In this document: piece after piece, positions 554-64,000 of the stretch
How the letters are laid out: every line of letters starts with the position of its first letter
Position numbering within the stretch: the stretch's first letter is position 1
IMG/VR virus record: IMGVR_UViG_3300009093_000035
Coordinates: 124,001 to 188,000 of that record
Strand: one strand, 5' to 3'
DNA: 64,000 nucleotides
Notes under the pieces: model-generated
Database searches by the model: none
What the model was told of the DNA's origin: nothing
What the model saw: the letters and a program-made list of their open reading frames with translations, nothing else
Translations under genes and position numbers: made by a program

Positions 554-1807
554 TCAGAGCTTCTTCATGACGTCGGTCCACTCTTCGAGGGACTTCCGGT
601 TCCGACCCACATCGGCCTCCGTAGCGGGCTGGACCACTCCGTTGATCGTGAATCCGGAGCTGCCGTTGGCGTTCGCCTCCAGGAGCTTCTCGTAGAGTTT
701 CACCTTCATCGGGACGAACTTCTTCAAGATCGTCGTGTCCGCTCCGGGGAAGTCCGAGAGGAACTCCGACATCTGAGCCGCCTCGGAATACTCCCCGAGG
801 CCGGTCCACTGAACGTGGCCCTTCTCGTCGAGGTACATCGCTCCGGCGAACTTCAGGTAGGTCGAAGCCTTCGGCTTGTTCCAGCGGCCCGTCTTCGGGT
901 CCATCGTCTGGGAGAGGAAACGGTAGCCCTTCCCGGAGTTGAACTCCAGCCAGAACTTCGCCTGGGTTCGGAGCTTGAACCCGTAGGGGTAGTCGTCGAC
1001 CACATAGGCCGAGTTCGGATCAGTGTGGCCGTAGAGGGGCTTCTTCGTCGAGGCCTTCTTCTCGAACTTCCCGCCCTTGGACTCGATCTTCTTCCGATCC
1101 GCGTCGGTGAGCCGATCCTTCTTGGCCTTGGAGTCCATCATCTCCTGCCACTCGGCTTCGTCTTCGTTCTTCGCCGGTCGCCAGGCGATCACTTCCTTCT
1201 CGGAAGCGGCGTGGTTCGACGGCATCCAGAGATCGTTCTCCTTCGCCGCGAACTCCTCCAGCTTCTGGAGGAACTTCATGTCCGCATCATCGAGAGCCTC
1301 GTAGGCCTCGTCGAGCGTCTTGTACTTCTCGTCGAAGTAGTCCCCCACCATCGCCAAGAACTTCTTCTCCACGTCGGACTCGGCGCCCTTCATGTGGTTC
1401 TTGATCCCCTTGATCATGCTCTGAGTCATGATCCCGCCCGTCTTCGAGAGGAGGGGGAGGAGAAGGGGGCGAAGCTCGGGCTTCTCGTGAGCGAGCCGAA
1501 TCGTAGCTGAACGGAGGTTGGTCATGGCTCGCTTCTCGTTGGGATGTTCTCGGAGATACCGCTCGCGAATAGAGGGATTCTCCCACTGAGGGAAGATGAA
1601 CTCCATCCCCTCCTGCTCGTAGGGAACGCGATTCTTCTTCAGCCAAGCGACGAACAGGTTGGCGGTGCCCCTGGTCCCCCACTCGACTACCGCCCGCGAA
1701 TCGTTCGCCTGGGGATTGCGCGTCGAGTAACTTGAGTTGCCGAACGTGTTCTCATCGTCCGCATCTCTCATCGCTCTGACGAGATCTTCGAATTCGTGGA
1801 AAGCCAT
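554..1807 (-). CDS. Multi-module protein with an internal LRSATIRLAHEKPELR tag; putative head cargo
   Basis: 417 aa. Internal Met at 1525 begins the tag. Modules are separated by KRA/KTG/KKAS motifs. C-terminal domain reads YVVDDYPYGF...WNKPKASTY. Confidence 0.75.
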   Translation of the reverse strand: MAFHEFEDLVRAMRDADDENTFGNSSYSTRNPQANDSRAVVEWGTRGTANLFVAWLKKNRVPYEQEGMEFIFPQWENPSIRERYLREHPNEKRAMTNLRSATIRLAHEKPELRPLLLPLLSKTGGIMTQSMIKGIKNHMKGAESDVEKKFLAMVGDYFDEKYKTLDEAYEALDDADMKFLQKLEEFAAKENDLWMPSNHAASEKEVIAWRPAKNEDEAEWQEMMDSKAKKDRLTDADRKKIESKGGKFEKKASTKKPLYGHTDPNSAYVVDDYPYGFKLRTQAKFWLEFNSGKGYRFLSQTMDPKTGRWNKPKASTYLKFAGAMYLDEKGHVQWTGLGEYSEAAQMSEFLSDFPGADTTILKKFVPMKVKLYEKLLEANANGSSGFTINGVVQPATEADVGRNRKSLEEWTDVMKKL

Positions 1808-1808
1808 C

Positions 1809-2447
1809 TCACTCCACCACGATCACGACGGAAAGATCGCGGACGACGGGGACCGCCCCGTACACCGCGAGCTTCGGCTTCACCTTCTTCAGGAGGGCGC
1901 TGAAATACGCCTCGTGGACTCTCTGGTCGAGGTGGCTGACCTTCTTCTTGTAGGCCCAATCGGTGTACGGGAAAGTGAGGTCGAACCAGTACTGAGCCTG
2001 ACCATCCTCGACCTTGAAGGACGAGTAGGAGGACCTCTTCGGGAGGATCGAGAGAGCCTCCCGAACGATGCGCTTGTCTTCCTCGGGACCGGCCGCGACG
2101 CGACCGAGAGCCTTCTCTCGCCGCTCTTGGGCTTGCTGGGGAGTGAGACCGATCGCCTTCGCTGCCTGACGGATCGCCTCTGACCAGGTCTTCCCGTAGT
2201 AGCCTTCGACCCCGAGCCCGCCCGCCGAACTGGCGCGAGTGACTCCGCGTCGAGACTTCCAGATCGAAGCTGTCCACTCCGGTCCGAGGAGGATCTTCAC
2301 GAGCTTGTCGACGGTTCGAGCCGACTGGCGATCGAGGATCGCCTCTTCGGCCTCAGCAGCAGCCTTCGCCAACAACGGCAGAAGATGCTCCCGAAGCTCG
2401 GGCTTCTCGTGGGCGAGTCGGATCGTGGCTGAGCGGAGGGATGCCAT
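1809..2447 (-). CDS. Hypothetical protein with an N-terminal LRSATIRLAHEKPELR tag; putative head cargo
   Basis: 212 aa, SD-like AGGGAG before the ATG, preceded by CGGT-N7-CTAT. Confidence 0.8.
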   Translation of the reverse strand: MASLRSATIRLAHEKPELREHLLPLLAKAAAEAEEAILDRQSARTVDKLVKILLGPEWTASIWKSRRGVTRASSAGGLGVEGYYGKTWSEAIRQAAKAIGLTPQQAQERREKALGRVAAGPEEDKRIVREALSILPKRSSYSSFKVEDGQAQYWFDLTFPYTDWAYKKKVSHLDQRVHEAYFSALLKKVKPKLAVYGAVPVVRDLSVVIVVE

Positions 2448-2462
2448 CTCCCTGAACCGGAA

Positions 2463-2477
2463 ATAGCTATCCCACCG
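2463..2477 (-). promoter_or_regulatory. Putative late promoter motif CGGT-N7-CTAT
   Basis: 15 nt upstream of the ATG at 2447; same pattern recurs at 7 other gene starts. Confidence 0.55.
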
Positions 2478-3636
2478 ACCGGGCTCGGATCTCGGTGGAA
2501 CTGATGTCCCAAGATCCCGGAAGGCGAGTCCAAACGCTGAGCGCCTCCAAAGACACGAGACCCGACGGGGCCAGCTCTTTCGAGCGCTTCTGGGAGACCT
2601 CGTCGATCGTGAGGAGCTTCCCGTCCACGATCCGGTTGGCGACGTAGAACCGACACCCGAGCTTCGAGAACTCGGTGATCATGTCCAGAACGCCGTCTCG
2701 ACCCTCCCCGTACCACTTCGGATCGAGCATCCGATCCATCGCGTCCGTTCCGATCACGAAACCCGCGCCGGGGTACTTCCGAGCCTTGTCGAGGTAGAGC
2801 GCGTCGTCGTACCCGAAGAGGAGGTCCTTCCCCCGGAACTGAGGGATTCGAGCGAGAGCCTCCGACACCGAGATCGTCTCCTTATGAGGAGGCTTCATCG
2901 TGATGTAGTAGGTCGCCCGGAGACCCGAGACCTTCTCCGCCGCCTCGGCCATCCCGAAGTGGCCAAAGTGAACCGGGTTGAACGCCCCCGGCACCAGAAG
3001 AAGCCCCCTCCCGTCCTTCGGGGCTTCCGTCCGAGTCCCGTCGGCTCGGAAGTAGGGGAGGCTCAGGAAGGGGTGGAGGTCTTGCGTCACGTGGACGGCT
3101 CCGCCCTGATAGATCTCCGCATCCAGGGGCTTCCCGGTGTAGGAGAGCTTCGCGGCAGACATGATCATGTCCATCGCGAGATGTACCACGAACTCCTCGT
3201 CCTTCTGACGAGCTTCGTACCCCACCCCTTTCCGGATGATGACGGAAGTGTGGAAGGCCGGCTCGTCCTTCGTACGGACGGCCACGCATACGCGATGGTC
3301 CCCTCGGTGTTCCCGAGTCCCGGCCACCGAAGCCGTGATCCCGACTCCGATCGGAGCCCCAGCCCGCTTCGAAGAGAGAGCCTTCATGTACGAGACCGAG
3401 GCCATGTCCACCGCAACGGACTCGGCGACGTACTTCTCCGGGCGGTACCCAAGGAACTCCGCGGTCGCGTCCTGATCGTACGGGAAGGACCCTCCGACCA
3501 GCACGGAGGAGATTCCGGGGACCGCCCACAACAGGGCCTGGAGGCTCGCCCCGGCCCCCGTAGCGGCGACGTAGAGCCGCGTAGGAGGTCCCGCGATCAA
3601 CCGCTCGATCGCCTCACGTTCAGCGAGCGTAGGCAC
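2467..3636 (-). CDS. CinA/PncC-like domain fused to NMN/NaMN adenylyltransferase (NadD/NadM-like)
   Basis: N-terminal TGAG..PGISS..PY..GVGITAS resembles the CinA C-terminal fold. C-terminal PGAFNPVHFGH (HxGH) and DISSTEIR are nucleotidyltransferase motifs. Overlaps the end of NAMPT. Confidence 0.8.
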   Translation of the reverse strand: MPTLAEREAIERLIAGPPTRLYVAATGAGASLQALLWAVPGISSVLVGGSFPYDQDATAEFLGYRPEKYVAESVAVDMASVSYMKALSSKRAGAPIGVGITASVAGTREHRGDHRVCVAVRTKDEPAFHTSVIIRKGVGYEARQKDEEFVVHLAMDMIMSAAKLSYTGKPLDAEIYQGGAVHVTQDLHPFLSLPYFRADGTRTEAPKDGRGLLLVPGAFNPVHFGHFGMAEAAEKVSGLRATYYITMKPPHKETISVSEALARIPQFRGKDLLFGYDDALYLDKARKYPGAGFVIGTDAMDRMLDPKWYGEGRDGVLDMITEFSKLGCRFYVANRIVDGKLLTIDEVSQKRSKELAPSGLVSLEALSVWTRLPGSWDISSTEIRARSVG

Positions 3637-5029
3637 GAAGCGGCTCCAGTGCGTTCGCCCGGACGACGTCCAGCATGATGCCGGAGCCGACCTGCTTCCC
3701 GTTCTCGTAGACGACGTGGAGGAGGGATGGGGCGTCCGACGAGCCCTCGGGGACGGTCATCGGCCCCGTCGGTCCCATCACGAGATCGAGACGGCCGCGC
3801 TTCGAGCGCTTCCCCGGATCCGTGACCGGGTCCTTGTAGACGTCGACCCACTTCCCGTCGATCAGACCCGACGAGCACTTGAAGGCGAACTTCTGGGTGT
3901 CGCGATCGACCTTCTGGAGAAGAGCCCCGCCCATCCCGAATCCGACGTTCGAGGCCGAGAACTGCTTCGACTCCGCCTCGTCGAGGATCTCCCCGATCGA
4001 GTTGTAGTTGATCCCGTCGCCCTGGATGATGCCGTAGTAGGCCGGAAGGACCTTGTAGCCCTTCTTGTTCTTCACGAGCGTCAGCTTCTTGTCGAGGAGC
4101 TGGAGGCAGGTACGGACGACCTCCGGCGGAATCCCCGAGTCCGGACGGATCACCATCTTCGCTCCCGAGCGCGCGACGTCGGCATGGAGAAGATCGCCCC
4201 AGAGGTTCTCCACGACGTTGTAGAGGTCGTACGAGTCCGAGACGCAGGCGACGATCGTCCCCGGCTTCGCGAACTGCTTGATCATGTTCCGGTACGCCTC
4301 GACCTCCATCTCCCGCCCCCAGGACGTGATCGTGGAGTGTTCGGAGGCCGGAATCGAGAACGCGGCCATTCCCTCGGGAGTCCCGTAGTAATGGTTCGCG
4401 TAGCGAATCCCCTCGATCGTGTCGGAGCCCTTGAAGTTCACGAGGTGGCTCATCCCGCCGATCCCTGCGCTCTCTCGCGAAGAGACGCCGCGCGAACCGA
4501 AGTCATGTAGCTTGAAGTCGATCTCCCCGAGCGGGTCGTCCGACGACTTCAGGAGGTGACGGAAGATCTCCGCCTTGCAGTGCCAAGAGAGCGTCGAGAC
4601 CGTGATCGGGTACCAGAGACGCATCAGCATCGTCTCCAGCCATCCGACGACCCAGAAGGTCTCCGGGTCGGTGCTCTCGACCGTCACGAGAACGTTGTTC
4701 ACGGGAACGACCGTTCCTTCGCGAACAGCCTTGATCCGAACAGGGAAGTAGCCGAGGTCTCGGATCCGCTCCATCCCCTTCCTCGGGAACGGGACGCCGT
4801 GAAGACGACAGAACGTGTCCATCTCGTCGATGTCGGCCGTCGTGACGAGGGCCTGGAGGTACCGAACGATCAGGTACTGGAGACCGAAGAAGACCGTCCG
4901 ATCGAACATCCCTCCTCGCGACTCCAGATACGAGTACATCCCCGTCATCTTGGGCGGGTACTGGAGGAAGTGGGAGGTCTTGTAGCTGTCGACGTCGCCG
5001 ATCGGATTTTCGCGGAGGGGTTCGCTCAT
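3620..5029 (-). CDS. nadV: Nicotinamide phosphoribosyltransferase (NAMPT)
   Basis: DSYKTSH, LHDFGSRG, SIPASEHS, VSDSYD, IRPDSG, IQGDG, FGMGGALLQ, KDPVTDPGKRSKRG motifs. Confidence 0.96.
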   Translation of the reverse strand: MSEPLRENPIGDVDSYKTSHFLQYPPKMTGMYSYLESRGGMFDRTVFFGLQYLIVRYLQALVTTADIDEMDTFCRLHGVPFPRKGMERIRDLGYFPVRIKAVREGTVVPVNNVLVTVESTDPETFWVVGWLETMLMRLWYPITVSTLSWHCKAEIFRHLLKSSDDPLGEIDFKLHDFGSRGVSSRESAGIGGMSHLVNFKGSDTIEGIRYANHYYGTPEGMAAFSIPASEHSTITSWGREMEVEAYRNMIKQFAKPGTIVACVSDSYDLYNVVENLWGDLLHADVARSGAKMVIRPDSGIPPEVVRTCLQLLDKKLTLVKNKKGYKVLPAYYGIIQGDGINYNSIGEILDEAESKQFSASNVGFGMGGALLQKVDRDTQKFAFKCSSGLIDGKWVDVYKDPVTDPGKRSKRGRLDLVMGPTGPMTVPEGSSDAPSLLHVVYENGKQVGSGIMLDVVRANALEPLRAYAR

Positions 5030-5042
5030 GTTCTTGGTCCTG

Positions 5043-6057: not shown

Positions 6058-6076
6058 TCCATTCGTCCGAGGGGGG

Positions 6077-6689: not shown

Positions 6690-6706
6690 ACGACGAAGTT
6701 ACGCCC

Positions 6707-7421: not shown

Positions 7422-7448
7422 GGCCTAGAAGGCCATTACGCCTTGAGG

Positions 7449-9173: not shown

Positions 9174-9176
9174 CGT

Positions 9177-9617: not shown

Positions 9618-9634
9618 ACCCCCTACGGACCCTT

Positions 9635-16907: not shown

Positions 16908-17435
16908 TCACCGGGCCGCCGCCCGGAGACAATGCTCTACGAAGTCGGAAGGCGGGCGAACGGCGTGCTTCTCGATGTAGTGGGCGAAGCCCTCGGGCCA
17001 GACGTAGGAGTCGTCGGTGAGGTCGGCCGAACCGTTCCGTACGCCGCACATCCTACAGTCCGACCATCCTCGGTACTGAGAAGCCGTCTTCCCGCCCCGG
17101 ACGTAGCTGAGGACGATCTCCCGTTCCGAGGCGTCCCAAGTCGGGTCTACGCTCGTCTCTACGGCCGGAAGGTCCATCTCCCCCGAGCCCTCGTAGATCC
17201 CCCACGAGGCCGGTACGGGCTTCCAGAAGCCGACCTTCGGTAGGCTCGCGAGTCTCTCGTTCCGCGCTCGGATCTTCGCGATCTCCGCGTCGGCCGGGAG
17301 CGCGTACTGATCCAACCCCCCTCGGGTCATCCTGATCACGCTCGCTTGCCTACCCACCAGAAGCGGGAGGAGAAACGGACGAAGCTCGGGCTTCGAGTGA
17401 GCCAGCCGGATCGTCTTCGATCGGAGATCGGTCAT
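16908..17435 (-). CDS. Tagged protein (LRSKTIRLAHSKPELR) with C-terminal CxxC...WPEG..HY..H domain; putative head cargo
   Basis: N-terminal tag ending in RQAS; late motif upstream. Confidence 0.8.
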   Translation of the reverse strand: MTDLRSKTIRLAHSKPELRPFLLPLLVGRQASVIRMTRGGLDQYALPADAEIAKIRARNERLASLPKVGFWKPVPASWGIYEGSGEMDLPAVETSVDPTWDASEREIVLSYVRGGKTASQYRGWSDCRMCGVRNGSADLTDDSYVWPEGFAHYIEKHAVRPPSDFVEHCLRAAAR

Positions 17436-17451
17436 CTAACCCAGAGAGCCG

Positions 17452-17466
17452 ATAGGAGCCTCAGCG
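17452..17466 (-). promoter_or_regulatory. Putative late promoter motif CGCT-N7-CTAT
   Basis: 16 nt upstream of the ATG at 17435. Confidence 0.55.
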
Positions 17467-17662
17467 GTCGGTATCAAACCGAGTCGGTTCAGCGCCGTCA
17501 AGTAGTCCCGTTCGGACAGTCCAAGCCACTCCTGCAAAGAAATGAACGCGCTGGAAGGCTCGTTGAACCAGTCGTCCACGGCGTCCTCGATCTCCCAGAA
17601 ACGATAGAGGCTGAACGCCCCGGCCTTGTGCACAAGCATTTCGCTACCTCATAGGGAGTGGG

Positions 17663-18847
17663 CTACAGGCCGAGCTTCGTCAACCGCTCTTCCGGAACGC
17701 CTGAAACGTCGAGGATGCCCCATACCGCCGCGGGACGAACACCACCGTCCGGCATGGAGGCGACCGCCCCGAGTCCCCCGAGGAAGCGCATCTGGAACTC
17801 CTGGCCCAGGTAGTCCCACTTGACCGGGACGGCGCTAACCTGCGAAGGAAAGTCGCTTGGATTCGGACCGCTCATGCCGGGACTACGTCGCTCCGGCTTG
17901 GACTCGTTCCTCATTCTCGCGAGCAACGCCGCGAGACGCTCTCCTTCGAGCATCCAGTTGCGCTTGAGGCCCACCTTGTAATCTCGCAGGAAGGGATAGA
18001 AGACCGCGACCCATCCGTTGACGAACGGGCCTCCGCTACCACCCCCCTCGGCGTAGAAGGAGCGCCAGAACTTGACGTCGATCGAGCCCGTCGCGGTCTC
18101 CACGAGCTTCTTGCAGACGCTCTGCAGCGGATCGAGCCACCAGGCGAGGTCTCCGAACTCCCGGAGGTTCTCGACGCGAGTGAGGATCGACTCCCAATCG
18201 CCCACCTCGCCTTCGAGGGTGATCTTCGGGAAGCCGCACATGGTCGTCATCCCGTAGTCGAAGTATTTCGACATCGCATCCATGAGGATGATCTCGCTGC
18301 AAGCCTTCTCCACGACCCCCGTCGTCGAGAAGTCGCACACGAGCAGGTCGCGCTTCTTACCGATGTACCCCTCGATCTGCCGAGAGAAGTCACCGAAGAG
18401 ACGCGTCCAGTCGTTGGAAGGAGACCCCTTCACGAAGTCGTGAGCCTCGACCTCGATGAACTGCTTACCCTCGAACTTCACGAACTGGTCTCGAAGCTCC
18501 TCCGCGTTCATCTTCACGTGCTGTGCGAAGCCGTGGGCGATCGCCATCCAGACGTGATCCGGCGAGAGACTCAGGGGAAGATGCAGGTTGTACGCGGCAC
18601 CGACCGCTCCGATCAGAGCGCTGGACGAAGACCAGCGATGTACGAGGAGATCCGATGCCCCCTCGACCCTCACGGTCGGTCGCTCCAGATCCGGACTCCG
18701 AAGCTCCGTAACTCTTCCGAGTCGGAGCCCGCCTTGAGGACGACCCTGGGTCTCGTACGTCTCCCGGAGCTTCGCCGCGTACGGGACGATCTCCAAGCGA
18801 CTGAGATCGTCCGGTTTCACGTCATCGAGTCGAAAGCTTTGAACCAT
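17663..18847 (-). CDS. DUF4419-family protein
   Basis: LSPDHVWMAI, DFSTT, MSKYFDY..MCGFPKITLEG..DW, GSGGPFVNGW motifs. Confidence 0.85.
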   Translation of the reverse strand: MVQSFRLDDVKPDDLSRLEIVPYAAKLRETYETQGRPQGGLRLGRVTELRSPDLERPTVRVEGASDLLVHRWSSSSALIGAVGAAYNLHLPLSLSPDHVWMAIAHGFAQHVKMNAEELRDQFVKFEGKQFIEVEAHDFVKGSPSNDWTRLFGDFSRQIEGYIGKKRDLLVCDFSTTGVVEKACSEIILMDAMSKYFDYGMTTMCGFPKITLEGEVGDWESILTRVENLREFGDLAWWLDPLQSVCKKLVETATGSIDVKFWRSFYAEGGGSGGPFVNGWVAVFYPFLRDYKVGLKRNWMLEGERLAALLARMRNESKPERRSPGMSGPNPSDFPSQVSAVPVKWDYLGQEFQMRFLGGLGAVASMPDGGVRPAAVWGILDVSGVPEERLTKLGL

Positions 18848-19444: not shown

Positions 19445-20323
19445 TCATCGCGTGATCTGAAGACGAGCCAGGCCGCGGGGGTTGTAGGCCCCAATGCCAA
19501 GGTTCTCGAAGACAGAGAAGCCGATCGTGCGCGCCTTCGGGTCGTCCGCCGAGAGGACCGTCAGCTCGGTACGGACCGGGATCCGACCGAACATCTCGGG
19601 CTCGCAGCACACGTACACCGTGCCCACCGGAACGAGGCGGCTCGTGATGACCTGGGCGCCCCAGAGGGTCGCCTGGAGGCCGGTCTTGAGCAGCGTCGCC
19701 TGGGACTCGATGTCCAGGATGTCCCGACCGAACTTGCGGATGTCCTCGTAGTCCCGCGCGTTCATGTACACGCGCGCGACCCGGAGGTCGTGGCGCTCGA
19801 TGAGAGCGAAGGCGTCCGCGAGAACCGCACCGGTGATCGGAGCGACGACGGGGATGTCCGGGTTCAGCCCGCCCGGGAGCGAGTCGAAGCCGTTCACCGC
19901 GATCGCGTCCAGAACCGCGAAGACGCGCTCGTCCTCGGCAGCCTGGATCATCGCACGCGCCAGATCCTGGGCGCGCTCGATCAGATCGAAGCGACGCTCC
20001 TTGATCTGGGTGAGCGGGATCTCCGGGTTCGAGGCGATCTCGAACAGCGGGAAGATCACGCGGCGCGGCTTGGTGATGGCGAGGATGTTCTCGCCTTCCT
20101 CGCCGACCACGTACGCGGTGACGTCCGGGTCCTTGTCGTAGATCGGCAGCGCGCCGTCCGGCAGCTGCTCCACGAGGAAGGTCTTTCGACCGACGCTCAT
20201 GTAGTCGCGGCGCGTACGAAGCGGCTGCGTCATGGACGCAGCGAGCTTGTTGCGACCCGAAGCGGTCTTCAGGTAGTCGCTGATGATCTTCTGCTTGACA
20301 GCGTTGTTGACGTTGATGGTCAT
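19445..20323 (-). CDS. Major capsid protein (HK97 fold, Bxz1-like)
   Basis: LAASMTQPLR..DY..RK; PLFEIASNPEI...IQAAEDERVF resembles the mycobacteriophage Bxz1-type MCP; follows protease and scaffold; strongly biased codons. Confidence 0.9.
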   Translation of the reverse strand: MTINVNNAVKQKIISDYLKTASGRNKLAASMTQPLRTRRDYMSVGRKTFLVEQLPDGALPIYDKDPDVTAYVVGEEGENILAITKPRRVIFPLFEIASNPEIPLTQIKERRFDLIERAQDLARAMIQAAEDERVFAVLDAIAVNGFDSLPGGLNPDIPVVAPITGAVLADAFALIERHDLRVARVYMNARDYEDIRKFGRDILDIESQATLLKTGLQATLWGAQVITSRLVPVGTVYVCCEPEMFGRIPVRTELTVLSADDPKARTIGFSVFENLGIGAYNPRGLARLQITR

Positions 20324-21026: not shown

Positions 21027-21398
21027 AGGGTTTCCTAGCCTTTGCTCCCTGTCGGGAGAGTGGTGAGTGGAGGATCAAGGACCCGTTCAGACCAGCCTGT
21101 CCGGGGCGACGGAGCCTCTGGGCGCCGTCAATATAAAGCGCCGTGTATTCGGTCAAAAACGAGATCTTCTGAAGAATTCTGACGCCATTGGGGCGTACAC
21201 CTGGAGAAGACCGATGAGAGAGGCGCTCGAAGGCAGTGACGAGAGGCGACAGGCGAGGATGCTTCTGCTCATCCACGCCGAGCAGGCACGAGCCCTTCAC
21301 CTCTCTTTCGATGGGTGGCTGGAACGCGAACGTCAGGACCTGATAGACGCGGTGTCGACTCAGGACCTGATTTCGATCGGATCAATCATCTGGGGCTA

Positions 21399-21432
21399 GA
21401 AACGAAAAGGGACCGGGCCGAAGCCCAGTCCC
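21399..21432 (-). terminator. Intrinsic terminator after the scaffold gene
   Basis: GGGACTGGGC-TTCG-GCCCGGTCCC followed by TTTTCGTTT. Confidence 0.85.
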
Positions 21433-21458
21433 TCCCCTAGTTCACCGATCGGTTCGGA

Positions 21459-22985
21459 TCAGCCGCCGAAGACCTTCGAGACGTCGGGGGACGTCTCCCA
21501 GAGCTTCGAGAGGTCCGCGATCTCGGCCGAAGCCGTACGCGAGTTCGAGGGAACCGAGCCGAGGGTGCGGGGACCGGTCGACGCGACGCGGGGCTGGGGC
21601 TTGACGGCGGCCTTCTTGGCCTCCTTCTTCGCCTCGTCCTCGTCGGACTTCTTCTCCTCGGCCTCGTCGTCCGCCTTCTTCTTCCCGGCGTAGCGACCAC
21701 CGTAGACGGCGGCCATCTCGTTCTCGCTGAGGCCACCCATCTCCGACGGGTCCATGAGAGCCATGGGGTCCTCGCCGAAGACGTCGTCCATCATCGGGTC
21801 CTCGTCCATGCCCGAGAGCATGTCGTTGACGTTGGCCTTCTTCTCCTCGCCCTCGGCCTCGTCCTCGGACTTCTTCTCTTCCTCGGCGTCGTCGTCGGCC
21901 TTCTTGGCCTCCTTCTTCGCCTCGTCGTCGTCCGAAGCCGTCTCCTCGTCGTCGTCGGCCTTCTTGGCCTCCTTCTTCTCGGAGTCGTCCTTCTTCTCGA
22001 AGGGGGGCGCCTTCTTCCCGCCGAAGGGCTCGTCCTTCTTCGCGGACTTGGCGGCCGAAGCCTTCTTCGACTCCTCCTCCATCATCTCCGCGAGCAGGGC
22101 TTCGTCCTCGTCCTCGTCTTCCGAGGCCTTCTTGTTCTTCCCGAGGTCCGAGCCCTCGTAGTTGTAGTGGGCGGGATCGTTCTGGTTGCCCGACGGAGCA
22201 GCGCGGCGACCCGAGGCCTTCTTCGCCTCCTTCTCGGTCTCCTCGTCCTCGTCCGCCTTCTTGGCTTCCTTCTCGGTCTCCTCTTCCTCTTCCTCGGCGG
22301 CCTTCTTCGCCTTCTTCGCGAAGTGGGCGGCGAGACGGGCGTACTTCGCAGCCTTCTTCGCCGCGACCTCCGCATCGTCCTCGTCTCCGTCCTCGTCGTC
22401 GGCCTTCTTGGCCTCCTTCTTGGACTCCTCTTCCTCTTCCTCGGCCTTCTTCGAAGCCGGGACCACGACGTCCTCGTCATCGACGATCATGTCGTCGGCG
22501 AGGAGATCGTCGGCCGAGCGCTCGGGCGTGAGCGTGTAGTTCGCGTCCTTCCCGCCGAGACGGGCGAGAGCGGCGGCGATCTGACGATCACCGAGCGACA
22601 TGAGGTCGAGGGCCTGGTCCTCGATCGCGTCCACGGACGCGTTCTTCGGAAGCATCGACGTCGCGATGCGGATGCACTTCGCGGCCTTCTGCGTCATCGC
22701 AGCGCGGAGCTGGCGGCTGGCCGCCTTCGACCCGCTCGGGAAGTAGTGGGCCGGATCCGTCGCCGGGTGACCCTGGGGCTCCTGCATGCCGGGGTCGGCC
22801 GGAGCGGGCGTGTTCGGGTAGGGACCCGGGTGCGGATCCTCGGCCCACGACGACGGATCGCCGTTCATGTACTTGTCCGCGTCCGGGTCGGGGCCGGGCC
22901 ACGCGGGGTGGTTGGTGCCTTCGGCGTAGCCCGGGGTAGCCGGGGGTGCAGAAGCCTTGCGATCGGTCGTTCGGCGGCGCGTCAT
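21459..22985 (-). CDS. Probable capsid scaffolding protein
   Basis: Between protease and capsid genes; acidic/Lys low-complexity EAKKADDE repeats. Confidence 0.7.
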   Translation of the reverse strand: MTRRRTTDRKASAPPATPGYAEGTNHPAWPGPDPDADKYMNGDPSSWAEDPHPGPYPNTPAPADPGMQEPQGHPATDPAHYFPSGSKAASRQLRAAMTQKAAKCIRIATSMLPKNASVDAIEDQALDLMSLGDRQIAAALARLGGKDANYTLTPERSADDLLADDMIVDDEDVVVPASKKAEEEEEESKKEAKKADDEDGDEDDAEVAAKKAAKYARLAAHFAKKAKKAAEEEEEETEKEAKKADEDEETEKEAKKASGRRAAPSGNQNDPAHYNYEGSDLGKNKKASEDEDEDEALLAEMMEEESKKASAAKSAKKDEPFGGKKAPPFEKKDDSEKKEAKKADDDEETASDDDEAKKEAKKADDDAEEEKKSEDEAEGEEKKANVNDMLSGMDEDPMMDDVFGEDPMALMDPSEMGGLSENEMAAVYGGRYAGKKKADDEAEEKKSDEDEAKKEAKKAAVKPQPRVASTGPRTLGSVPSNSRTASAEIADLSKLWETSPDVSKVFGG

Positions 22986-24427
22986 GTCAGTCTCTCCTTG
23001 TGGGCACGAGTTTCGGCGGTTCGCCGAGCGGTAGGAAGATCCGCCAACAGGGTTGCCAACCGAACCATCGTGTTGACTTCCTCGTTGGAGGGAGCGTGGC
23101 CGAGAGCTTTCTTCACGGCCTTCAAGAAATGAGCCGGTTCCCGATACAAATCTCGGGCTCCAACCTTTAGCGCAGCCCTATAGATTGAAACGGGAAGCAA
23201 AACGCCGATTTCCCGATTCAGGGTTGCAACACGGTTGATCAGTTCGACGTCCGAGGTAGACGTCGCCACCAGGGTACGGAGCGACGCCACGTAGGCGGCC
23301 CTCTTCCCGGCGAGGCGAGCCTGCTTCACGACGGTGTCATTCGGAGCGTCCGAAGGCGGCAGGACCTGGTCCTCGACCTTCTTCTTCGTCAACTCTTCCT
23401 TCAGCTGGTCCTTCACGCCGTCGAGGACGACCGACTTCAGCTCGTTCTCGATCCCACCCAGCGGGGACTCCGAGGGGCCCTTCTTCGGCGGAGCCATCTC
23501 CTCTTCTGGAGCGGCTTCCTCTTCCTCAGGAGCGTCCTCGAACCCGCCGGTGCGGGCGGCCTTCTTCCGGGCGTTCGGATCCGCGACCGGAGCCGGGGAG
23601 GCGAAGACCTTCTCGGCCGCCTTCTTCTTCCCGCTGTCGATCTCCACGACGTTTCGAGCGACGGCGCCCGTGAACGCGGGGGTCTCTACCCAGGAAGCCT
23701 CGACGAAGGTAACGCCGCCGGTCGGGTCGAGAGACTCGTCCCCACACAGCTCAGCGACCCGGTGCTTCCCACCGTTCTCGTCGTAGAAGACGTTGCCCTT
23801 CTCGTAGCGAATGTGATCGCAGAACTCGGTCTCGTCCGCCGCCCAGTGACCGCACTTTGTGCAGGTCGAGCCGTCGATCGAGCACCCCATCGAGAGAGTC
23901 GAAAGCTCCCCTGAGGCGATCTTCGCGCAGAGGTCTTCGTGCTTCCGGTCGTTCGCGACGAGGATGTCCACGTAGATCGAGTCGCCGACGTCGCGGGCTA
24001 CCGCATCGATGATGCGACCCTTCGAGAGCTTCTCGATCTGGACGTGCTCCACGAAGGAGTGTCCCCCGACGAAGGTCTTGTACGACTTCAGAAGGACCGG
24101 ACGGGCCCAGGAGTCGAGGTTGTTGTTGATGTACTTGTCGCAGGCGCTCTTGATCCGGAAGTTCGTCGTCTTCCGGACGATCTTCTTCCCGTCCTCCGTA
24201 GAGGAACCCAGCTTCGCCTTCGGGACCTTCTCGGTATCCACCGAGGCCACGATCGTAGCATGGGTGAGGAGGAACTTCTTCGGGTCGAAGTCCGACTGAA
24301 GGATCTTCGAGGCCTGGTCGATGATATCTCGCCCGGCCTTGAGCGAACCCGACGCCACCCTCACCCGGTCCCAGTCTCGGACGTGGGGAGTAACGTTGAT
24401 GCTACGGGCGTAGCGAAGGAAAGCCAT
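22982..24427 (-). CDS. Prohead (capsid maturation) protease
   Basis: NNNLDSW..YKTF..FVEH, SMGC (catalytic Ser), CTKCG..CDH zinc insert, FVEASWVETPAF. Confidence 0.85.
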   Translation of the reverse strand: MAFLRYARSINVTPHVRDWDRVRVASGSLKAGRDIIDQASKILQSDFDPKKFLLTHATIVASVDTEKVPKAKLGSSTEDGKKIVRKTTNFRIKSACDKYINNNLDSWARPVLLKSYKTFVGGHSFVEHVQIEKLSKGRIIDAVARDVGDSIYVDILVANDRKHEDLCAKIASGELSTLSMGCSIDGSTCTKCGHWAADETEFCDHIRYEKGNVFYDENGGKHRVAELCGDESLDPTGGVTFVEASWVETPAFTGAVARNVVEIDSGKKKAAEKVFASPAPVADPNARKKAARTGGFEDAPEEEEAAPEEEMAPPKKGPSESPLGGIENELKSVVLDGVKDQLKEELTKKKVEDQVLPPSDAPNDTVVKQARLAGKRAAYVASLRTLVATSTSDVELINRVATLNREIGVLLPVSIYRAALKVGARDLYREPAHFLKAVKKALGHAPSNEEVNTMVRLATLLADLPTARRTAETRAHKERLT

Positions 24428-40372: not shown

Positions 40373-40984
40373 TCAGTCGATCACGCAGTCGATCCGAGAA
40401 GTCGGAGTCCGACGGCGACGAACTTCCCTCATGATGTTGAGGTTGTCCGCGATCATCTTGAAGATGTCCGAGTAGAAAGCCATCGACTCGTCGGCCGACA
40501 TCTTCTTGATCGAACGAATGAACCGGTGTCGGACGAGCCCCTGCGAAACCTTCAGTCGCTTCGCGCTCTCGCTCTGACACGTCGTCTCGTACATGAACAT
40601 CATGATGTCGATGTCCATGGGGTCTGTCATGAACCGGGAGAGATCCGCTCTCATCTGAACCACATCCACCTTCGGGAGGATCAGAAGGAACTTGATTCGA
40701 TCGATCGCTCGATAGAGACGATAGCAGACTGTGGGTTGACTCACCCCGAAGATCGACGCGATGTCGGTCTGCTTGACATGCTTGAAGAAGTACATGTCCA
40801 TGAAGTCGGCTTCGACGGGAGGGAGGAGGTCGAGCATCCCCTTCACCTTGTCCATCATCTTGACGTCGTCCTCGTCAGGCTCGGTGAACACCGAACCGAA
40901 GTACGAGAGGGAGTCCTCCGTAGAGAACACCGCGTCCGGATCAAACGAGGCGGCTGAGCCCCGAAAATTTTGACTCGTCTTCAT
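40373..40984 (-). CDS. Protein with two tandem sigma70 region-4-like HTH domains
   Basis: LPPVE..KQTDIASIFGVSQPTVCYRLYRA and CQSESAKRLKVSQGLVRHRFIRS. Confidence 0.75.
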   Translation of the reverse strand: MKTSQNFRGSAASFDPDAVFSTEDSLSYFGSVFTEPDEDDVKMMDKVKGMLDLLPPVEADFMDMYFFKHVKQTDIASIFGVSQPTVCYRLYRAIDRIKFLLILPKVDVVQMRADLSRFMTDPMDIDIMMFMYETTCQSESAKRLKVSQGLVRHRFIRSIKKMSADESMAFYSDIFKMIADNLNIMREVRRRRTPTSRIDCVID

Positions 40985-41014
40985 TCGGGGACCTCAAGAG
41001 AGACCCTGTTGGTC

Positions 41015-41623
41015 TCAATCCTCAGGGATATACTCGGGACCTACGGCGACGTCAAGAGGGTCGACTTCGCTGAGAGTATCCTCTCCTGAGTTCTCCGAGA
41101 CGTCTACCAGAAAGACCTTGGGCAACCAAGTCACGACGTCGATAGACCTGAGTGTGATACGAACGGCAGCACGATCTCCGTTCAAATCTACCACTTCGCC
41201 CTCCAGGTGGGTGTAGTTCCCACCTGTGATTTTCACCTTCGCCTCGATCTCGATGTCTGAAGAGACCTGACTCCTCAGCTGGTCCATCATGCCTCGAATC
41301 TTCGAGTCGGGGACCGTCTGGAGCGTTCGAAGATTGTAGGGTCCCGAGGAGGACATGACTCGGCTCACCAGCGCTCCGCGCTCTAGAGCAAAGTACCGGG
41401 TCTCCGTTAGACCGGAGCCTACGAACGCGTAACCCTCGATCAGGCGGACCGAGACTTTTCTCCCGCCCTTCGAGTAACTGGTGTAGGGAACGAAGATCGG
41501 ATGGGACTCGGGGATAGACAGACCGCTACGCAACGCTTCTACGAGCGTTCCGTCGATCGCCTTCTGTTCACCCGCCTTGGTCAGCTCCAGCGCTACCCAA
41601 GTTATCTTGTCCCGAACGTCCAT
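41015..41623 (-). CDS. NusG/RfaH-family transcription elongation factor
   Basis: NGN: W..L, IFVP..RLIEGYAFV. KOW: KVKITGGNYTHLEGEVV. Confidence 0.85.
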   Translation of the reverse strand: MDVRDKITWVALELTKAGEQKAIDGTLVEALRSGLSIPESHPIFVPYTSYSKGGRKVSVRLIEGYAFVGSGLTETRYFALERGALVSRVMSSSGPYNLRTLQTVPDSKIRGMMDQLRSQVSSDIEIEAKVKITGGNYTHLEGEVVDLNGDRAAVRITLRSIDVVTWLPKVFLVDVSENSGEDTLSEVDPLDVAVGPEYIPED

Positions 41624-58769: not shown

Positions 58770-58803
58770 GATTCCTTGTTACGCTTCTGAAAGGAAAAGG
58801 GAA

Positions 58804-60732: not shown

Positions 60733-60758
60733 GTGTCAACCCCGTGGTTTGAAGAACG

Positions 60759-60792
60759 AAAAAAAGGGACGAGTCTGGGGATCCCGTCCTTC
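60759..60792 (-). terminator. Terminator-like hairpin in the nrdJ leader
   Basis: AGGACG-N13-CGTCCC followed by T7, about 26 nt before the nrdJ ATG. Confidence 0.65.
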
Positions 60793-60893
60793 TTGAGAAT
60801 CAAGAGGCAGGTCCTCAGTCTACCAACTCCACACTCATCGAATGGAGGCGAAGTAGGTAAAGACCGAGGCACATTTACCAAGAAACCGAGACA

Positions 60894-61847: not shown

Positions 61848-62476
61848 TAGACCCCCACCAAGAAAGCCGCGAGGACTCGGGCCGGGGTAAGGGCCGTCCG
61901 CCGCGTGTGTAGATCACGTACGGAGCCCCAGAGAGCTAGGAGGTCGTTCCGTAGGTTCGGATCCGAAAGACCCTCCTGGATGGCTTCTACGAGCGCGAGG
62001 AGCACAAACTCCTCGTCCCCCTTCGACTCCTTCAGCTCGGAGACGATCTCGGACCAGTTCTTCCCCAGGTAGGCCTTCAGGAGCCGGTCGGCCTGGGTAC
62101 GGCTAAGCGAGACCCGCTCGTCCACCCCCGGAACGAACGTGTGGAGGGTCCGAGACCGAAGAGTGGGGATCACCCCACCGAAGTCCCACGCCCAGAGGAA
62201 GGGTCGAATCTTCCCCGGTACGAACTCCTCGATCGTCTTGAGAAGGACGTCCCCCACCTCGGGAGTGATCTCGTCCAGAGGACCGACCACTACACCCCAA
62301 GGCTTCTCTCCGATCGGAGTCTGACTCAGAAGAGACACCAACTCTCGGGCGTCCCCCTTCTTCATAGCCTCCCCAGAAGTACCGAAAGGAAGAACTAGCC
62401 CATATTCCTTGGCCTCATTCTTCGCTGCGGCTTCTGACCCCGGGCCGTGATAGAGTGATACGGATCCGATCTCCAT
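61847..62476 (-). CDS. Truncated DNA polymerase III delta-prime-like subunit
   Basis: LYHGPG, DVLLKTIEE, VIPTLRSR. Confidence 0.7.
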   Translation of the reverse strand: MEIGSVSLYHGPGSEAAAKNEAKEYGLVLPFGTSGEAMKKGDARELVSLLSQTPIGEKPWGVVVGPLDEITPEVGDVLLKTIEEFVPGKIRPFLWAWDFGGVIPTLRSRTLHTFVPGVDERVSLSRTQADRLLKAYLGKNWSEIVSELKESKGDEEFVLLALVEAIQEGLSDPNLRNDLLALWGSVRDLHTRRTALTPARVLAAFLVGV

Positions 62477-62495
62477 GAGAACGGAACCTTACGCC

Positions 62496-64000
62496 CTAGA
62501 GCTTACCTTTCGACTCCAACGCCTGGTACACAGTCGGGTAGTTGGTCTTCATCTCCCCTCGACCAATACCACCAAGGTACGAAGCGACCTGCTGAAAGCT
62601 TCTACCGTCCTCGACCATTTCCATGGCCTTGTCTTCCTGGTCTCGACGGAAGGAATCGAGCTTCCCCTTAGCACCGGCTTGCCTCGACGACTCCCAGACC
62701 CTCGTCCCCAGGCCGCTGCTGTTCAGGGTGGCGACCTCGATCTTCACCCCGTTCTTCGAAAGCTTGTAGTTGGCGCGAAACCCGCCGTGTTCCACGTTGG
62801 CGTGGTCCATCTTCCAACCGGCCTTCTCCAAGGCGTCGGTCACGTCGGTGTCGTTCTTCTTCTTCGAGGTCCAGGCCAAGGCCCCCGCGACCGGAGGAGT
62901 GAGACGGATCCCCGCCTTCTTCAGATCCGCTACGAAGGCCGGAACATCGGCCGCCTCCTTCAAGACCGGAAGAAGCGTCGACCGGAGTTCAGGCTTCGAG
63001 TGAGCGAGACGAATCAGTTGGGAGCGGAGGGCCATACGAGGTTGAGTTGATAGGCTTCCTACTTTCGTAGGTTCCCACTTCACCGTCCCGCGAGTCTTCT
63101 CCAAGGCATCCTGATACTCCTGATCGGAGGGTTCCTTCTTGGTCATCCGGGCGGGCTTGAAGGTTTCGAACACGCGGAGGTTCGAGGCTGGGATACGACC
63201 TTCGTAGGCGACCGTCCCCTTCGCTCGAAGGGTCGAGAGCATCTTCTGTTCGAACTTCCGGGCGATCTCGTCCGCGTTCGGCTTACCCCTCCAGTTCCCC
63301 TTGAAGTGAACATCCTGTTGATCGGAGGGCATCTCTGGCATGACGCTACTCAGCCATCCGCCGTTGTCTTCGTCGAGACGAAACTTCGTGAAGTCGTTCA
63401 CCTCGACTTCGAGGACTACGGCGATCGACCTATCGATCGAAGCCGCCCGCGCCGCGTACTTCTCGGCTTCGGAGACCTTCGTGGTCAGATAGACCATGCG
63501 ATCCGAATAGCCCTTGATCACGTCGTTGGAGTAGGCGTCCTCATCAATCCCTGTAGGACTCCCGGGACGCAGACCCTTGATCTTGATCACCTTCCAACGG
63601 ACCGCCGACGTTCCGTGATACATCTTCACGGAACCGAAGCTCTTCGAGGAGACCTCGTCGACCGTGTCGACTTCGCTCGACCCGAGGATCTCTCCGACTG
63701 TCTTGTTCCTCCAGACAGGAGACTTGAAGATCCGGTAATCGCTCTGGACGAACCCGCCCTGTAGGAGCGCCTTCAGAATCTTCCGAACCTTCCGAGGATC
63801 GTCCTCCAGCTCTGTGTCGGCGTGAGGGTACGCGTACGAGCCGTTCCCCTTGATCGCGGGATACCGAGACTGGGTCTTCGACTCAAACGGGCTGAGGTCG
63901 AGCGTTCCCGTGCTCGGGTCTACTCCGATGATCGGAGAGTAGTAGAACTTGTCGTCCTCTCGATACGAGAGACGGGCGCTGACGCCAGTTAGAAAGAGAA
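62496..64000 (-). CDS. Multi-module protein starting beyond the window: ADP-ribosyltransferase-like domain, internal LRSQLIRLAHSKPELR tag, C-terminal module
   Basis: Frame is open from 63998 with no stop. MYHGTS..GLRP..VYLT..AEKYA..VLEV..IP resembles H-type ART/Tpt1-like folds. Internal ATG at 63035 begins the tag. Confidence 0.75.
   Translation of the reverse strand, partial: LFLTGVSARLSYREDDKFYYSPIIGVDPSTGTLDLSPFESKTQSRYPAIKGNGSYAYPHADTELEDDPRKVRKILKALLQGGFVQSDYRIFKSPVWRNKTVGEILGSSEVDTVDEVSSKSFGSVKMYHGTSAVRWKVIKIKGLRPGSPTGIDEDAYSNDVIKGYSDRMVYLTTKVSEAEKYAARAASIDRSIAVVLEVEVNDFTKFRLDEDNGGWLSSVMPEMPSDQQDVHFKGNWRGKPNADEIARKFEQKMLSTLRAKGTVAYEGRIPASNLRVFETFKPARMTKKEPSDQEYQDALEKTRGTVKWEPTKVGSLSTQPRMALRSQLIRLAHSKPELRSTLLPVLKEAADVPAFVADLKKAGIRLTPPVAGALAWTSKKKNDTDVTDALEKAGWKMDHANVEHGGFRANYKLSKNGVKIEVATLNSSGLGTRVWESSRQAGAKGKLDSFRRDQEDKAMEMVEDGRSFQQVASYLGGIGRGEMKTNYPTVYQALESKGKL
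63050..63063 (-). promoter_or_regulatory. Intragenic putative late promoter AGT-N7-CTAT
   Basis: 14 nt upstream of the internal tag ATG at 63035. Confidence 0.45.

What the first reader, a model, noticed from the sequence alone, without database searches (positions are those of the whole stretch)
1436..63035. Portable ~25-aa tag on four unrelated proteins: candidate capsid-loading signal for injected cargo
Seen: the same peptide occurs four times. 1525-1436 MTNLRSATIRLAHEKPELRPLLLPLLSKTG; 2447-2355 MASLRSATIRLAHEKPELREHLLPLLAKAA; 17435-17340 MTDLRSKTIRLAHSKPELRPFLLPLLVGRQAS; 63035-62949 MALRSQLIRLAHSKPELRSTLLPVLKEAA. The copies differ at synonymous positions, so conservation is at protein level, and the sequences after the tag share nothing. 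Every copy starts with Met, even the two inside longer ORFs, and ends in (K/R)-x-(A/G). Three of four lie 14-16 nt behind the motif that also precedes virion genes, although they are far from the head operon. Known precedent: T4 internal proteins carry a short N-terminal capsid-targeting sequence removed by the prohead protease. Inference: this is an amphipathic docking helix that loads diverse effectors into the prohead and is then cleaved, making a promoter+tag cassette that can recruit any gene as virion cargo.
Basis: partly seen in the sequence, partly recalled or inferred. Interest (0 to 1): 0.92.

Follow-up and report, generated by a model that had tools for sequence, protein, structure and literature searches.

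The report
Portable docking peptide of huge soil phages

Summary
The peptide LRSxxIRLAHxKPELRxxLLPLL occurs exactly four times in the window, conserved at protein level, on unrelated passengers. The window belongs to a 248.6-kb rhizosphere phage contig with at least 11 copies.

A profile of 77 copies hits 4,408 protein clusters (50% identity) in metagenomes. No Pfam, NCBIfam or PHROGs model covers it, and no cultured phage carries it. It marks a clade of huge phages with a phage-G-type capsid protein that is 89-98% identical across contigs.

- About 60-75% of copies are N-terminal, but 8% are C-terminal and at least 16% internal.
- Some proteins carry 2-7 copies joined by charged linkers.
- In the window, tags A and D lie inside real coding frames.

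So this is a position-independent docking module, not an N-terminal signal. Capsid loading remains the leading but unproven reading. For it: some passengers are domain types predicted elsewhere to be injected with phage DNA, tagged genes sit inside head operons of relatives, the tag is basic and the scaffold acidic, and both share a KKA linker motif. Against it: tags are not enriched near the capsid gene, and tagged-gene arrays sit beside NAD-salvage genes.

The parts
1436..1525 (-). Tag A. It is internal: residues 95-124 of the 417-aa ORF 554-1807.
   Evidence: Translation; HMM E 1.9e-18. The upstream 94 codons have a coding GC3 pattern in the same frame, and an SD+ATG lies at 1807.
554..1807 (-). 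Passenger ORF A (417 aa). Its C-terminal domain (residues 258-422) is orthologous to tag-proximal domains in two other phages.
   Evidence: With tags masked, blast gives 75% identity to L017 and 61% to L031. No Pfam or PHROG family.
2355..2447 (-). Tag B, a true N-terminus of the 212-aa ORF 1809-2447.
   Evidence: HMM E 2.7e-18. The upstream open frame is non-coding by GC3 and has no start codon.
2463..2466 (-). CTAT motif 15 nt upstream of the tag B ATG.
   Evidence: enrichment across relatives.
16908..17435 (-). Tag C (17340-17435) plus its passenger, 175 aa in all. The C-terminal part gives a weak DUF7919 hit. The ATG abuts the in-frame TAG stop of the 67-aa gene 17436-17639.
   Evidence: HMM E 5e-20; Pfam PF25535 E 3e-6.
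17452..17455 (-). CTAT motif 16 nt upstream of the tag C ATG.
62949..63035 (-). Tag D. It is internal and forms the junction between a conserved ADP-ribosyltransferase-like (ART-like) N-domain and a variable C-domain.
   Evidence: HMM E 1.3e-16. Coding GC3 upstream. Homologues P0152 (N-domain + tag + different C), P0153 (N-domain only, ends just before the tag) and P0154 (no tag).
62496..64000 (-). ORF D. It runs off the window end; the full protein is 512 aa (P0151) on the source contig.
   Evidence: PHROG 13493/11974 hits in the N-domain. Atlas leads to Arr/DarT/PARP at 0.85.
63050..63053 (-). CTAT motif 14 nt upstream of the internal ATG of tag D.
19445..20323 (-). Major capsid protein of phage-G gp27 type; a candidate docking partner (context, not shown to bind).
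   Evidence: PDB 6wkk_A E 5.8e-61. 89-98% identical in 80 IMG/VR contigs. 39% identical to phage G and 49% to Tunturi_5.
21459..22985 (-). Scaffold-like acidic low-complexity protein (508 aa, pI 4.6) with 15 KKA repeats; a candidate docking partner (context).
   Evidence: Translation. Composition, and KKA 15 versus 1.2 +/- 1.0 in shuffles. Sits between protease and capsid gene, syntenic in LR745208.
22982..24427 (-). Prohead protease-domain protein (481 aa); a candidate processing enzyme (context).
   Evidence: phrog_18299 E 5e-16; 40% identical to the Tunturi_5 head maturation protease.

Best explanation
The tag is a self-contained, position-independent docking module of about 26 residues. 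It is basic (mean net charge +3) and forms a helix, a kink at the conserved Pro, then a second helix. Nine conserved hydrophobic residues and three conserved arginines are too few to make a stable fold alone, so it probably folds on a partner. It is joined to passengers by flexible Lys/Gly/Ala/Ser-rich linkers.

It tethers 10-20 accessory proteins per genome to one conserved phage-encoded partner. Some passengers are domain types predicted elsewhere to be injected with phage DNA.

The most likely partner is the interior of the assembling prohead, either the strongly acidic scaffold core or the inner face of the hyper-conserved phage-G-type capsid protein. Tagged proteins would then be encapsidated and delivered with the DNA. 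Multi-tag proteins would bind with higher avidity or act as adaptors. K-x-A/KKA flanks, shared with the scaffold, may be protease sites that free the cargo.

Shown: the module exists, is portable, is independent of position, is restricted to this phage clade, has diverse passengers, and marks a junction where downstream domains are exchanged.
Inferred: that it is a docking peptide.
Speculative: that the partner is the prohead, and that the tag is cleaved.
For: Module and portability:
- 4 copies in the window and at least 11 in the genome.
- 179 distinct copies in IMG/VR loci.
- 4,408 clusters at E<=1e-3 and 891 at E<=1e-10.

Protein-level selection.
Two-helix prediction.

Position independence and linkers:
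- N-terminal, C-terminal, internal and multi-copy arrangements.
- 28% of internal tags have K[KE]A/KKS in the preceding 9 residues, versus 2% of random windows in the same proteins.

Junction of exchange: P0151 and P0152 are 81% identical through the tag and diverge completely after it; P0153 stops just before it. Metagenome contigs of relatives match only nt 17380-17414, with unlike flanks.

Passengers include ART-PolyVal, ParBc_2, RelA_SpoT, GNAT, RNA ligase, pentapeptide and WGR domains. ART, ParB-like, RelA/SpoT and GNAT domains are among those treated for polyvalent proteins, which PMC5512222 predicts to be packaged and injected.

Capsid link:
- 9 of 12 large contigs with this capsid protein carry tags.
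- In LR745208 a tagged gene sits between scaffold and decoration/capsid genes.
- In L037 a tagged gene directly follows the capsid gene, and in L023 tagged genes lie between p665 and p247 next to TerL.
- A 1,780-aa protein with 5 tags is inserted in the operon leading to TerL and portal.
- The scaffold has pI 4.6 with 15 KKA repeats.

Precedents for short shell-binding peptides, including repeated motifs in disordered loading domains of HK97-fold encapsulins: PMC8049743 and 10.1101/2024.04.23.590730.
Against: - There is no direct evidence of binding or encapsidation.
- Tag density within 10 kb of the capsid gene (1 per 30 kb) equals the genome average; the bias to the downstream side may only reflect a variable region.
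- Tags A and B, and the multi-tag proteins P0001 and P0005, sit in arrays next to NAD-salvage genes (NAMPT, NUDIX/NrtR, NAD synthase), not head genes.
- The window's own scaffold and the 1,078-aa polyvalent-like protein in the head operon lack the tag.
- Tunturi_5 shares the capsid lineage (49% identity) but shows no tag in its 47-kb head/tail region. It and phage G (39%) gave no tag match in the tblastn searches with two tags. The tag is therefore not a general feature of this capsid type.
- Expression timing is unknown: the metatranscriptome run showed capsid-gene contigs only.
- Some passengers (RNA ligase, TFIIS-like, zinc ribbons) have no known need to be in a virion.
Confidence: 0.4

Rival explanations
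1. Sticker-and-spacer assembly tag. The tags bind each other or a multivalent partner. Multi-tag charged disordered proteins would act as scaffolds, and single-tag enzymes as clients, of a condensate or viral factory in the infected cell rather than in the capsid.
For: Proteins with 2-7 tags are separated by K/D/E-rich low-complexity linkers and other short recurring motifs, and some proteins consist only of tags. The isolated two-helix unit would expose its hydrophobic face. Tag arrays lie in accessory regions next to NAD-salvage genes.
Against: There is no evidence of self-association. 155 of 166 tagged ORFs in the less biased sample carry a single tag. Nothing known in this clade indicates a compartment.
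Confidence: 0.2
2. Docking to a non-capsid hub. The tag recruits diverse accessory proteins to a phage or host machine such as a chaperone, protease, RNA polymerase, clamp or membrane complex, for example to time their activity or turnover.
For: Position independence, conserved surface arginines, and passengers related to nucleic-acid and nucleotide metabolism. There is no positional enrichment at the capsid gene.
Against: No candidate hub was identified. Restriction to one capsid clade would be explained only by shared ancestry.
Confidence: 0.15
3. Nucleic-acid-binding mini-domain. The basic helix-kink-helix and Lys-rich linkers bind DNA, so passengers ride on the genome, whether or not they are packaged.
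For: Mean net charge +3, invariant R19, near-invariant R5, R at position 10 in most copies (K in a few), and Lys/Gly-rich flanks.
Against: Nine conserved hydrophobic positions and an LLPLL helix are atypical of DNA-contacting helices. The tag resembles no known DNA-binding family in Pfam or NCBIfam.
Confidence: 0.1
4. Strict T4-type capsid targeting sequence: an N-terminal signal removed by the prohead protease.
For: The majority of copies are N-terminal (101-136 of 179). [KR]x[AG] directly follows 39% of tags. A prohead protease is encoded.
Against: There are C-terminal, internal and multi-copy tags. Tags A and D of this window are internal. The tag lacks the short Leu/Ile-x-Glu cleavage motif known for T4 (own knowledge).
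Confidence: 0.05
5. A selfish or neutral recombination cassette with no protein function.
For: The tag marks junctions where downstream sequence is exchanged.
Against: There is strong protein-level constraint with saturated synonymous change and only 8-20 nt identical runs. Conservation spans phages whose protease is only 51% identical.
Confidence: 0.03

Closest known systems
Phage T4 capsid targeting sequence (CTS) of internal proteins and Alt
   Same: A short amphipathic peptide on unrelated proteins that directs them into the prohead for co-injection. An ART-like passenger (tag D protein; a lead only) would parallel Alt. T4 Alt packaging is cited in PMC5512222; CTS details are from own knowledge.
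   Different: The CTS is about 10 residues, strictly N-terminal, and removed at Leu/Ile-x-Glu. This tag is about 26 residues, also occurs C-terminally, internally and repeated, and shows no such cleavage motif. Packaging is untested.
Encapsulin cargo-loading peptides and disordered cargo-loading domains (Families 1 and 2)
   Same: Short conserved motifs on flexible linkers bind the inside of an HK97-fold shell. They can be N- or C-terminal and occur as multiple repeats in long disordered domains (PMC8049743; 10.1101/2024.04.23.590730).
   Different: There is no sequence relationship beyond a trivial RLA(N/H)E resemblance to LARLANEFFS. Encapsulin cargo genes are operonic with the shell gene, whereas tags here are scattered. 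Here the shell is a real virus capsid.
P22-type scaffolding protein coat-binding helix-turn-helix (own knowledge)
   Same: A basic two-helix hairpin of about 30 residues that docks on the inner capsid surface and can carry foreign cargo into procapsids.
   Different: That element is on the scaffolding protein itself. The scaffold-like protein of this window has no tag.
Polyvalent proteins and MuF/portal-fused effectors (Iyer et al. 2017, PMC5512222)
   Same: The passenger repertoire overlaps (ART, ParB-like, RelA/SpoT, GNAT, RNA-repair), there is evidence of modular shuffling, and delivery with the DNA is predicted.
   Different: Their packaging determinant is a large domain (MuF, portal fusion), not a 26-residue peptide. 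Most tagged proteins here are small and single-domain.

Membership tests
T4-type capsid targeting sequence | Strictly N-terminal location | tested here: not met
   15 C-terminal and 28 internal copies without Met among 179; 50 C-terminal and 191 internal among 353 in the multi-copy-biased set; tags A and D are internal.
T4-type capsid targeting sequence | Removal by the prohead protease at a defined site | not testable with these tools
   Only a weak [KR]x[AG] flank (39%). There is no proteomic data and no cultured member.
T4-type capsid targeting sequence | Passenger present in mature virions | not testable with these tools
   No virion proteome exists for any tag-bearing phage.
Encapsulin cargo-loading peptide/domain | Short conserved motif on a flexible linker at a cargo terminus, sometimes repeated | tested here: met
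Encapsulin cargo-loading peptide/domain | Cargo gene adjacent to the HK97-fold shell gene | tested here: not met
   34 tags in 1,017 kb around capsid genes, equal to the genome-average density. Only some relatives have tags inside head operons.
Encapsulin cargo-loading peptide/domain | Binding to the shell interior | not testable with these tools
   No multimer prediction or experiment was available.
P22-type scaffold coat-binding domain | Located at the C-terminus of the scaffolding protein | tested here: not met
   The scaffold-like ORF 21459-22985 has no tag.
Polyvalent proteins (PMC5512222) | 2-15 conflict-related domains in one polypeptide, often with MuF/portal/MPTase | tested here: inconclusive
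   Some passengers carry ART-PolyVal, ParBc_2, RelA_SpoT or GNAT domains, but most tagged ORFs are small and no MuF was found.
Any curated protein family (Pfam-A, NCBIfam, PHROGs) | A model that matches the tag | tested here: not met
   About 200 tagged proteins were scanned. No shared family covers the tag.

The most novel reading that the evidence does not exclude
A large clade of uncultured huge soil phages runs its own protein-sorting system. One 26-residue, position-independent label, exchanged between genes by recombination at the tag, loads about 5% of the proteome (10-20 diverse counter-defence or takeover proteins per genome, plus multi-tag adaptors) into the capsid for co-injection. 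The same K-x-A/KKA grammar is used by the prohead protease to dismantle the scaffold and release the cargo.
Probability: 0.3. Interest if true: 0.85.

Novelty: new variant of a known kind. Interest (0 to 1): 0.62.

Why it matters
If the tag is a capsid- or hub-targeting label, it would give three things:
1. A sequence-only way to list the injected or co-localised proteins of hundreds of uncultured huge phages, thousands of proteins that currently have no annotation.
2. An explanation of how such phages recruit new accessory genes, by swapping modules at the tag.
3. A compact, position-independent peptide for loading foreign proteins into HK97-fold shells.

Even with its function unknown, the tag is a large uncatalogued protein module (at least 4,400 clusters) that deserves a family model.

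Tried and rejected
- Megablast of 20 kb of the window against GenBank phages found nothing.
- There are no tRNAs.
- Literature search for motif strings gave no relevant paper.
- The phage G multi-omics paper holds nothing on such a motif.
- AF2 of the full tag D protein with a 4-sequence alignment was unusable (pLDDT 44), so no fold search was run on it.
- ESM Atlas on multi-tag protein P0005 gave only weak unnamed viral clusters (0.78).
- Sequencing runs: only contig-level data were available. A soil metatranscriptome covers the capsid gene of relatives but not the tag C gene, so there is no timing or transcription-start information.
- The sigma-70 promoter scan of 16-25 kb found none.
- The idea that multi-tag proteins are the head scaffold was rejected. 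Their genes lie next to NUDIX/NAD genes, and the window's scaffold lacks tags.
- The idea that tags cluster at the capsid gene was rejected.
- The scan of cellular genomes used one narrow pattern and cannot be repeated, so absence from bacteria is only provisional.

Full report
OBSERVATION

An HMM built from them recovers only these four in the six-frame translation of the window (E 7e-17 to 3e-20; the next hit has E 0.68).

In the 23-codon core, pairs share 17-21 residues, yet 8-12 of the identical residues use different codons. The longest identical nucleotide runs are 8-20 nt. The constraint is therefore on the protein. With tags masked, the passengers are unrelated to each other.

All four copies begin with ATG. 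CTAT lies 15, 16 and 14 nt before the ATG of B, C and D, and is absent before A.

Third-codon-position GC (GC3) by frame shows a difference between the copies. The stretches upstream of tags A and D are coding in the tag's own frame. The stretch upstream of B is not. So B and C are N-terminal. A sits at residue 95 of a 417-aa ORF, and D sits about 330 residues into a 512-aa protein.

WHAT THE WINDOW IS

All recognisable genes lie on the - strand, GC is about 61%, and there are no tRNAs.

PHROGs, Pfam and PDB searches identify two gene sets:
- A T4-like replication and recombination set: clamp loader, UvsX, Dda-like helicase, SbcCD, and ribonucleotide reductase (RNR).
- A head module: the large terminase TerL, portal, a 1,078-aa HAD_SAK_1 + topoisomerase-IB protein, a prohead protease, and a 508-aa acidic low-complexity scaffold-like protein. 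These are followed by a 226-aa protein and a 292-aa major capsid protein that matches phage G gp27 (PDB 6wkk_A, E 5.8e-61).

The window is part of IMG/VR contig 3300009093_000035 (248,579 bp) from a rhizosphere metagenome.

The only close GenBank relative is the 485-kb uncultured phage LR745208. Against it, TerL is 70% identical, protease 51%, and capsid protein 93%. The nearest cultured phages are Tunturiibacter phage Tunturi_5 (capsid protein 49%) and phage G (39%).

THE TAG BEYOND THE WINDOW

The source genome has at least 11 distinct copies, including four consecutive tagged genes outside the window.

Pattern scans of IMG/VR found the tag in more than 100 further stretches, mostly on contigs of 40-500 kb, with 10-20 copies per large contig.

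A profile of 77 copies, searched against 1.84 billion cluster representatives, gave 4,408 proteins at E<=1e-3 and 891 at E<=1e-10. The members looked up come only from metagenomes and carry no names.

The tag appears to be uncatalogued and phage-restricted:
- No Pfam, NCBIfam or PHROGs model covers it.
- No paper containing the motif was found.
- A scan of 185,579 species genomes, with one narrow pattern, found a single hit on a Myxococcales MAG contig.
- Two different tags used as tblastn queries found only LR745208 among 50,697 phage records.
- The 47-kb head/tail region of Tunturi_5 has none.

The capsid protein is 89-98% identical across the best 80 of 559 IMG/VR matches. Nine of the twelve large contigs in that list carry tags by two narrow DNA patterns. 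The tag is therefore a hallmark of this capsid clade, but not of the wider gp27-type lineage.

ANATOMY

Consensus: x-x-x-L-R-S-x-x-I-R-L-A-H-x-x-P-E-L-R-x-x-L-L-P-L-L-K-x-A. R19 is invariant. L4, R5, I9, L11, A12, P16, L22, L23 and P24 are at least 90% conserved.

AF2 on the 77-sequence alignment predicts helix 3-14, a break at P16, and helix 16-27 (pLDDT 79). Mean net charge is +3.

Position, in 179 distinct copies from IMG/VR loci:

| Position class | Copies |
|---|---|
| Clearly N-terminal | 101 |
| Probably N-terminal | 8 |
| Met-preceded with a long open frame upstream (some, like tag B, are really N-terminal) | 27 |
| Internal without Met | 28 |
| Within 12 residues of the stop | 15 |

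Eleven ORFs in this sample carry 2-3 copies.

In the top 150 global hits, which are biased to multi-copy proteins, 353 tags split into 112 N-terminal, 50 C-terminal and 191 internal, with up to 7 per protein. Some proteins are only tags plus K/D/E-rich linkers and a few other recurring short motifs. One of 63 aa is just two tags.

Flanks of the tag:
- Internal tags are preceded by K-x-A-S.
- 28% of internal tags have K[KE]A/KKS in the preceding nine residues, against 2% of random windows in the same proteins.
- 39% of tags are followed directly by [KR]x[AG].

JUNCTION BEHAVIOUR

The tag D protein has three homologues:
- P0152 shares the N-domain (81% identity) and the tag, then diverges completely.
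- P0153 is the N-domain alone and ends just before the tag position.
- P0154 has the N-domain, no tag, and another C-terminus.

Metagenome contigs of related strains match the window only over nt 17380-17414, inside tag C, with unlike sequence on both sides.

The passenger of protein A reappears, directly behind a tag, downstream of the capsid gene in another phage.

The tag is thus a point at which modules are exchanged.

PASSENGERS AND CONTEXT

Most passengers have no family. Those that do include ART-PolyVal, ParBc_2, DUF2958, RNA ligase, pentapeptide repeats, RelA_SpoT, GNAT, WGR, LRV/HEAT repeats, zinc ribbons, DUF7717 and DUF7919.

ART, ParB-like, RelA/SpoT and GNAT domains are among those that Iyer et al. 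treat for polyvalent proteins, which they predict to be packaged and injected (PMC5512222).

The N-domain of protein D carries conserved H-G-T-S, Y-L-T-T and E-V-E blocks and gives weak Atlas leads to Arr/DarT/PARP. This ART assignment is a lead, not a finding.

Gene context is mixed.
- Next to or inside head and packaging operons:
  - In LR745208, a tagged gene lies between scaffold and p226/capsid gene. The window has a 430-nt gene-less gap at that position.
  - In L037, a tagged gene directly follows the capsid gene.
  - In L023, tagged genes lie between p665 and p247 beside TerL.
  - In L232, a 1,780-aa five-tag protein is inserted in the operon leading to TerL and portal.
- Elsewhere:
  - Tag density around capsid genes (34 in 1,017 kb) equals the genome average.
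  - Tags A and B lie beside a nicotinamide phosphoribosyltransferase gene.
  - Multi-tag proteins P0001 and P0005 sit in tagged-gene arrays beside NUDIX/NrtR, NAD synthase and isochorismatase-like genes.

PROMOTER CLAIM

CTAT occurs within -50 to -5 of 23 of 52 tag ATGs in relatives, against 26 of 170 control ORFs. There is a peak at 14-16 nt, and often no Shine-Dalgarno sequence in between. The motif is also found before Met-preceded internal tags (8 of 14).

This fits a dedicated promoter-like element giving short-leader mRNAs. However, its temporal class is unknown, and none of the identified head genes in the window has it.

INTERPRETATION

The data establish a position-independent, linker-borne, strongly constrained peptide on many unrelated proteins. 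That is the signature of a docking module for a shared, conserved partner.

The prohead interior is the best candidate partner, for these reasons:
- The tag co-occurs with one capsid clade whose capsid protein is unusually conserved.
- Some passengers are domain types predicted elsewhere to be injected with phage DNA.
- Tagged genes are inserted in head operons of relatives.
- The tag is basic while the scaffold is strongly acidic (pI 4.6).
- The scaffold carries 15 KKA repeats (1.2 expected by shuffling), the same motif that precedes internal tags.

Precedents are the T4 CTS, the P22 scaffold hairpin (both from own knowledge), and encapsulin loading peptides and domains, including repeated motifs in disordered domains.

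None of this shows binding or packaging. A cytoplasmic sticker-and-spacer assembly, another hub, or nucleic-acid binding remain open.

The strict T4-like model (N-terminal, then cleaved) is contradicted by the position data.

VERDICT

The feature is real, widespread and uncatalogued. The N-terminal and cleavage claims are not supported as stated. Capsid loading is plausible (about 0.4) but untested.

Noticed in passing
window 19445-20323 (-); loci L047-L126: The 292-aa phage-G-type major capsid protein is 89-98% identical across the best 80 IMG/VR contigs (4 kb to 618 kb), while TerL and portal are about 60-70% and protease about 51% identical in the same relatives. That is unusually strong constraint for a capsid protein.
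   Followed up: partly
window 25738-28974 (-): A 1,078-aa protein between portal and protease combines a HAD domain of 'Swiss Army Knife' RNA-repair proteins, a polynucleotide-kinase-like N-terminus and a eukaryotic-type topoisomerase IB catalytic core. It is a polyvalent-looking protein inside the head operon, and it has no tag.
   Followed up: no
window 3620-5029 (-); L045, L046: A nicotinamide phosphoribosyltransferase gene (about 50-55% identical to annotated phage NAMPTs) lies just upstream of tagged genes B and A. In other contigs, tagged-gene arrays sit beside NUDIX/NrtR, NAD synthase and isochorismatase-like genes, a recurring link to NAD-salvage islands.
   Followed up: partly
window 21459-22985 (-): The scaffold-like protein (pI 4.6, net charge about -47) has 15 KKA motifs, mostly within E-A-K-K-A-D/S repeats, against 1.2 expected from its composition. 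The same K[KE]A motif is enriched just before internal tags. It may be a shared protease site.
   Followed up: partly
window 21027-21458: A 430-nt gene-less gap lies between scaffold and p226. It begins with a terminator-like hairpin (21426-21410). In LR745208 the same position holds a tagged 143-aa gene.
   Followed up: partly
window 17436-17639 / 17435: The 67-aa gene upstream of tag C ends in TAG directly abutting the tag's ATG, in the same frame, and has its own CTAT 11 nt upstream. The layout mimics the N-domain-plus-tag fusions seen in proteins A and D, but with a stop in between.
   Followed up: no
window 63036-64000 (-); P0151-P0154: The N-domain of the tag D protein has conserved YHGTS, VYL(T/S)T and VVLxVxV.DF...LDEDN blocks and gives weak language-model leads to Arr, DarT and PARP families. 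It may be an ADP-ribosyltransferase.
   Followed up: partly
P0001, P0005, P0012, P0081, P0082; L011, L008, L027: Multi-tag proteins carry other recurring short motifs in their charged linkers: GCEKLPEGPMRDNC (13 of 150 representatives match the CEKLP core), FDPSEIG...EPYMKGxFTxxExxEL, GEVPEAFKKQW, and RFEEG. A similar MDPSEMGG occurs in the window's scaffold at about 21755.
   Followed up: partly
window 40373-41623 (-); L232 1649-2873: Homologues of two window genes just upstream of the operon that leads to TerL are annotated with KOW and sigma-70 region 4 domains. They may be phage transcription factors for that operon.
   Followed up: no
window 17663-18847 (-): A 394-aa protein downstream of the capsid gene is a strong match to DUF4419 (E 4e-71), a family of unknown function.
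   Followed up: no
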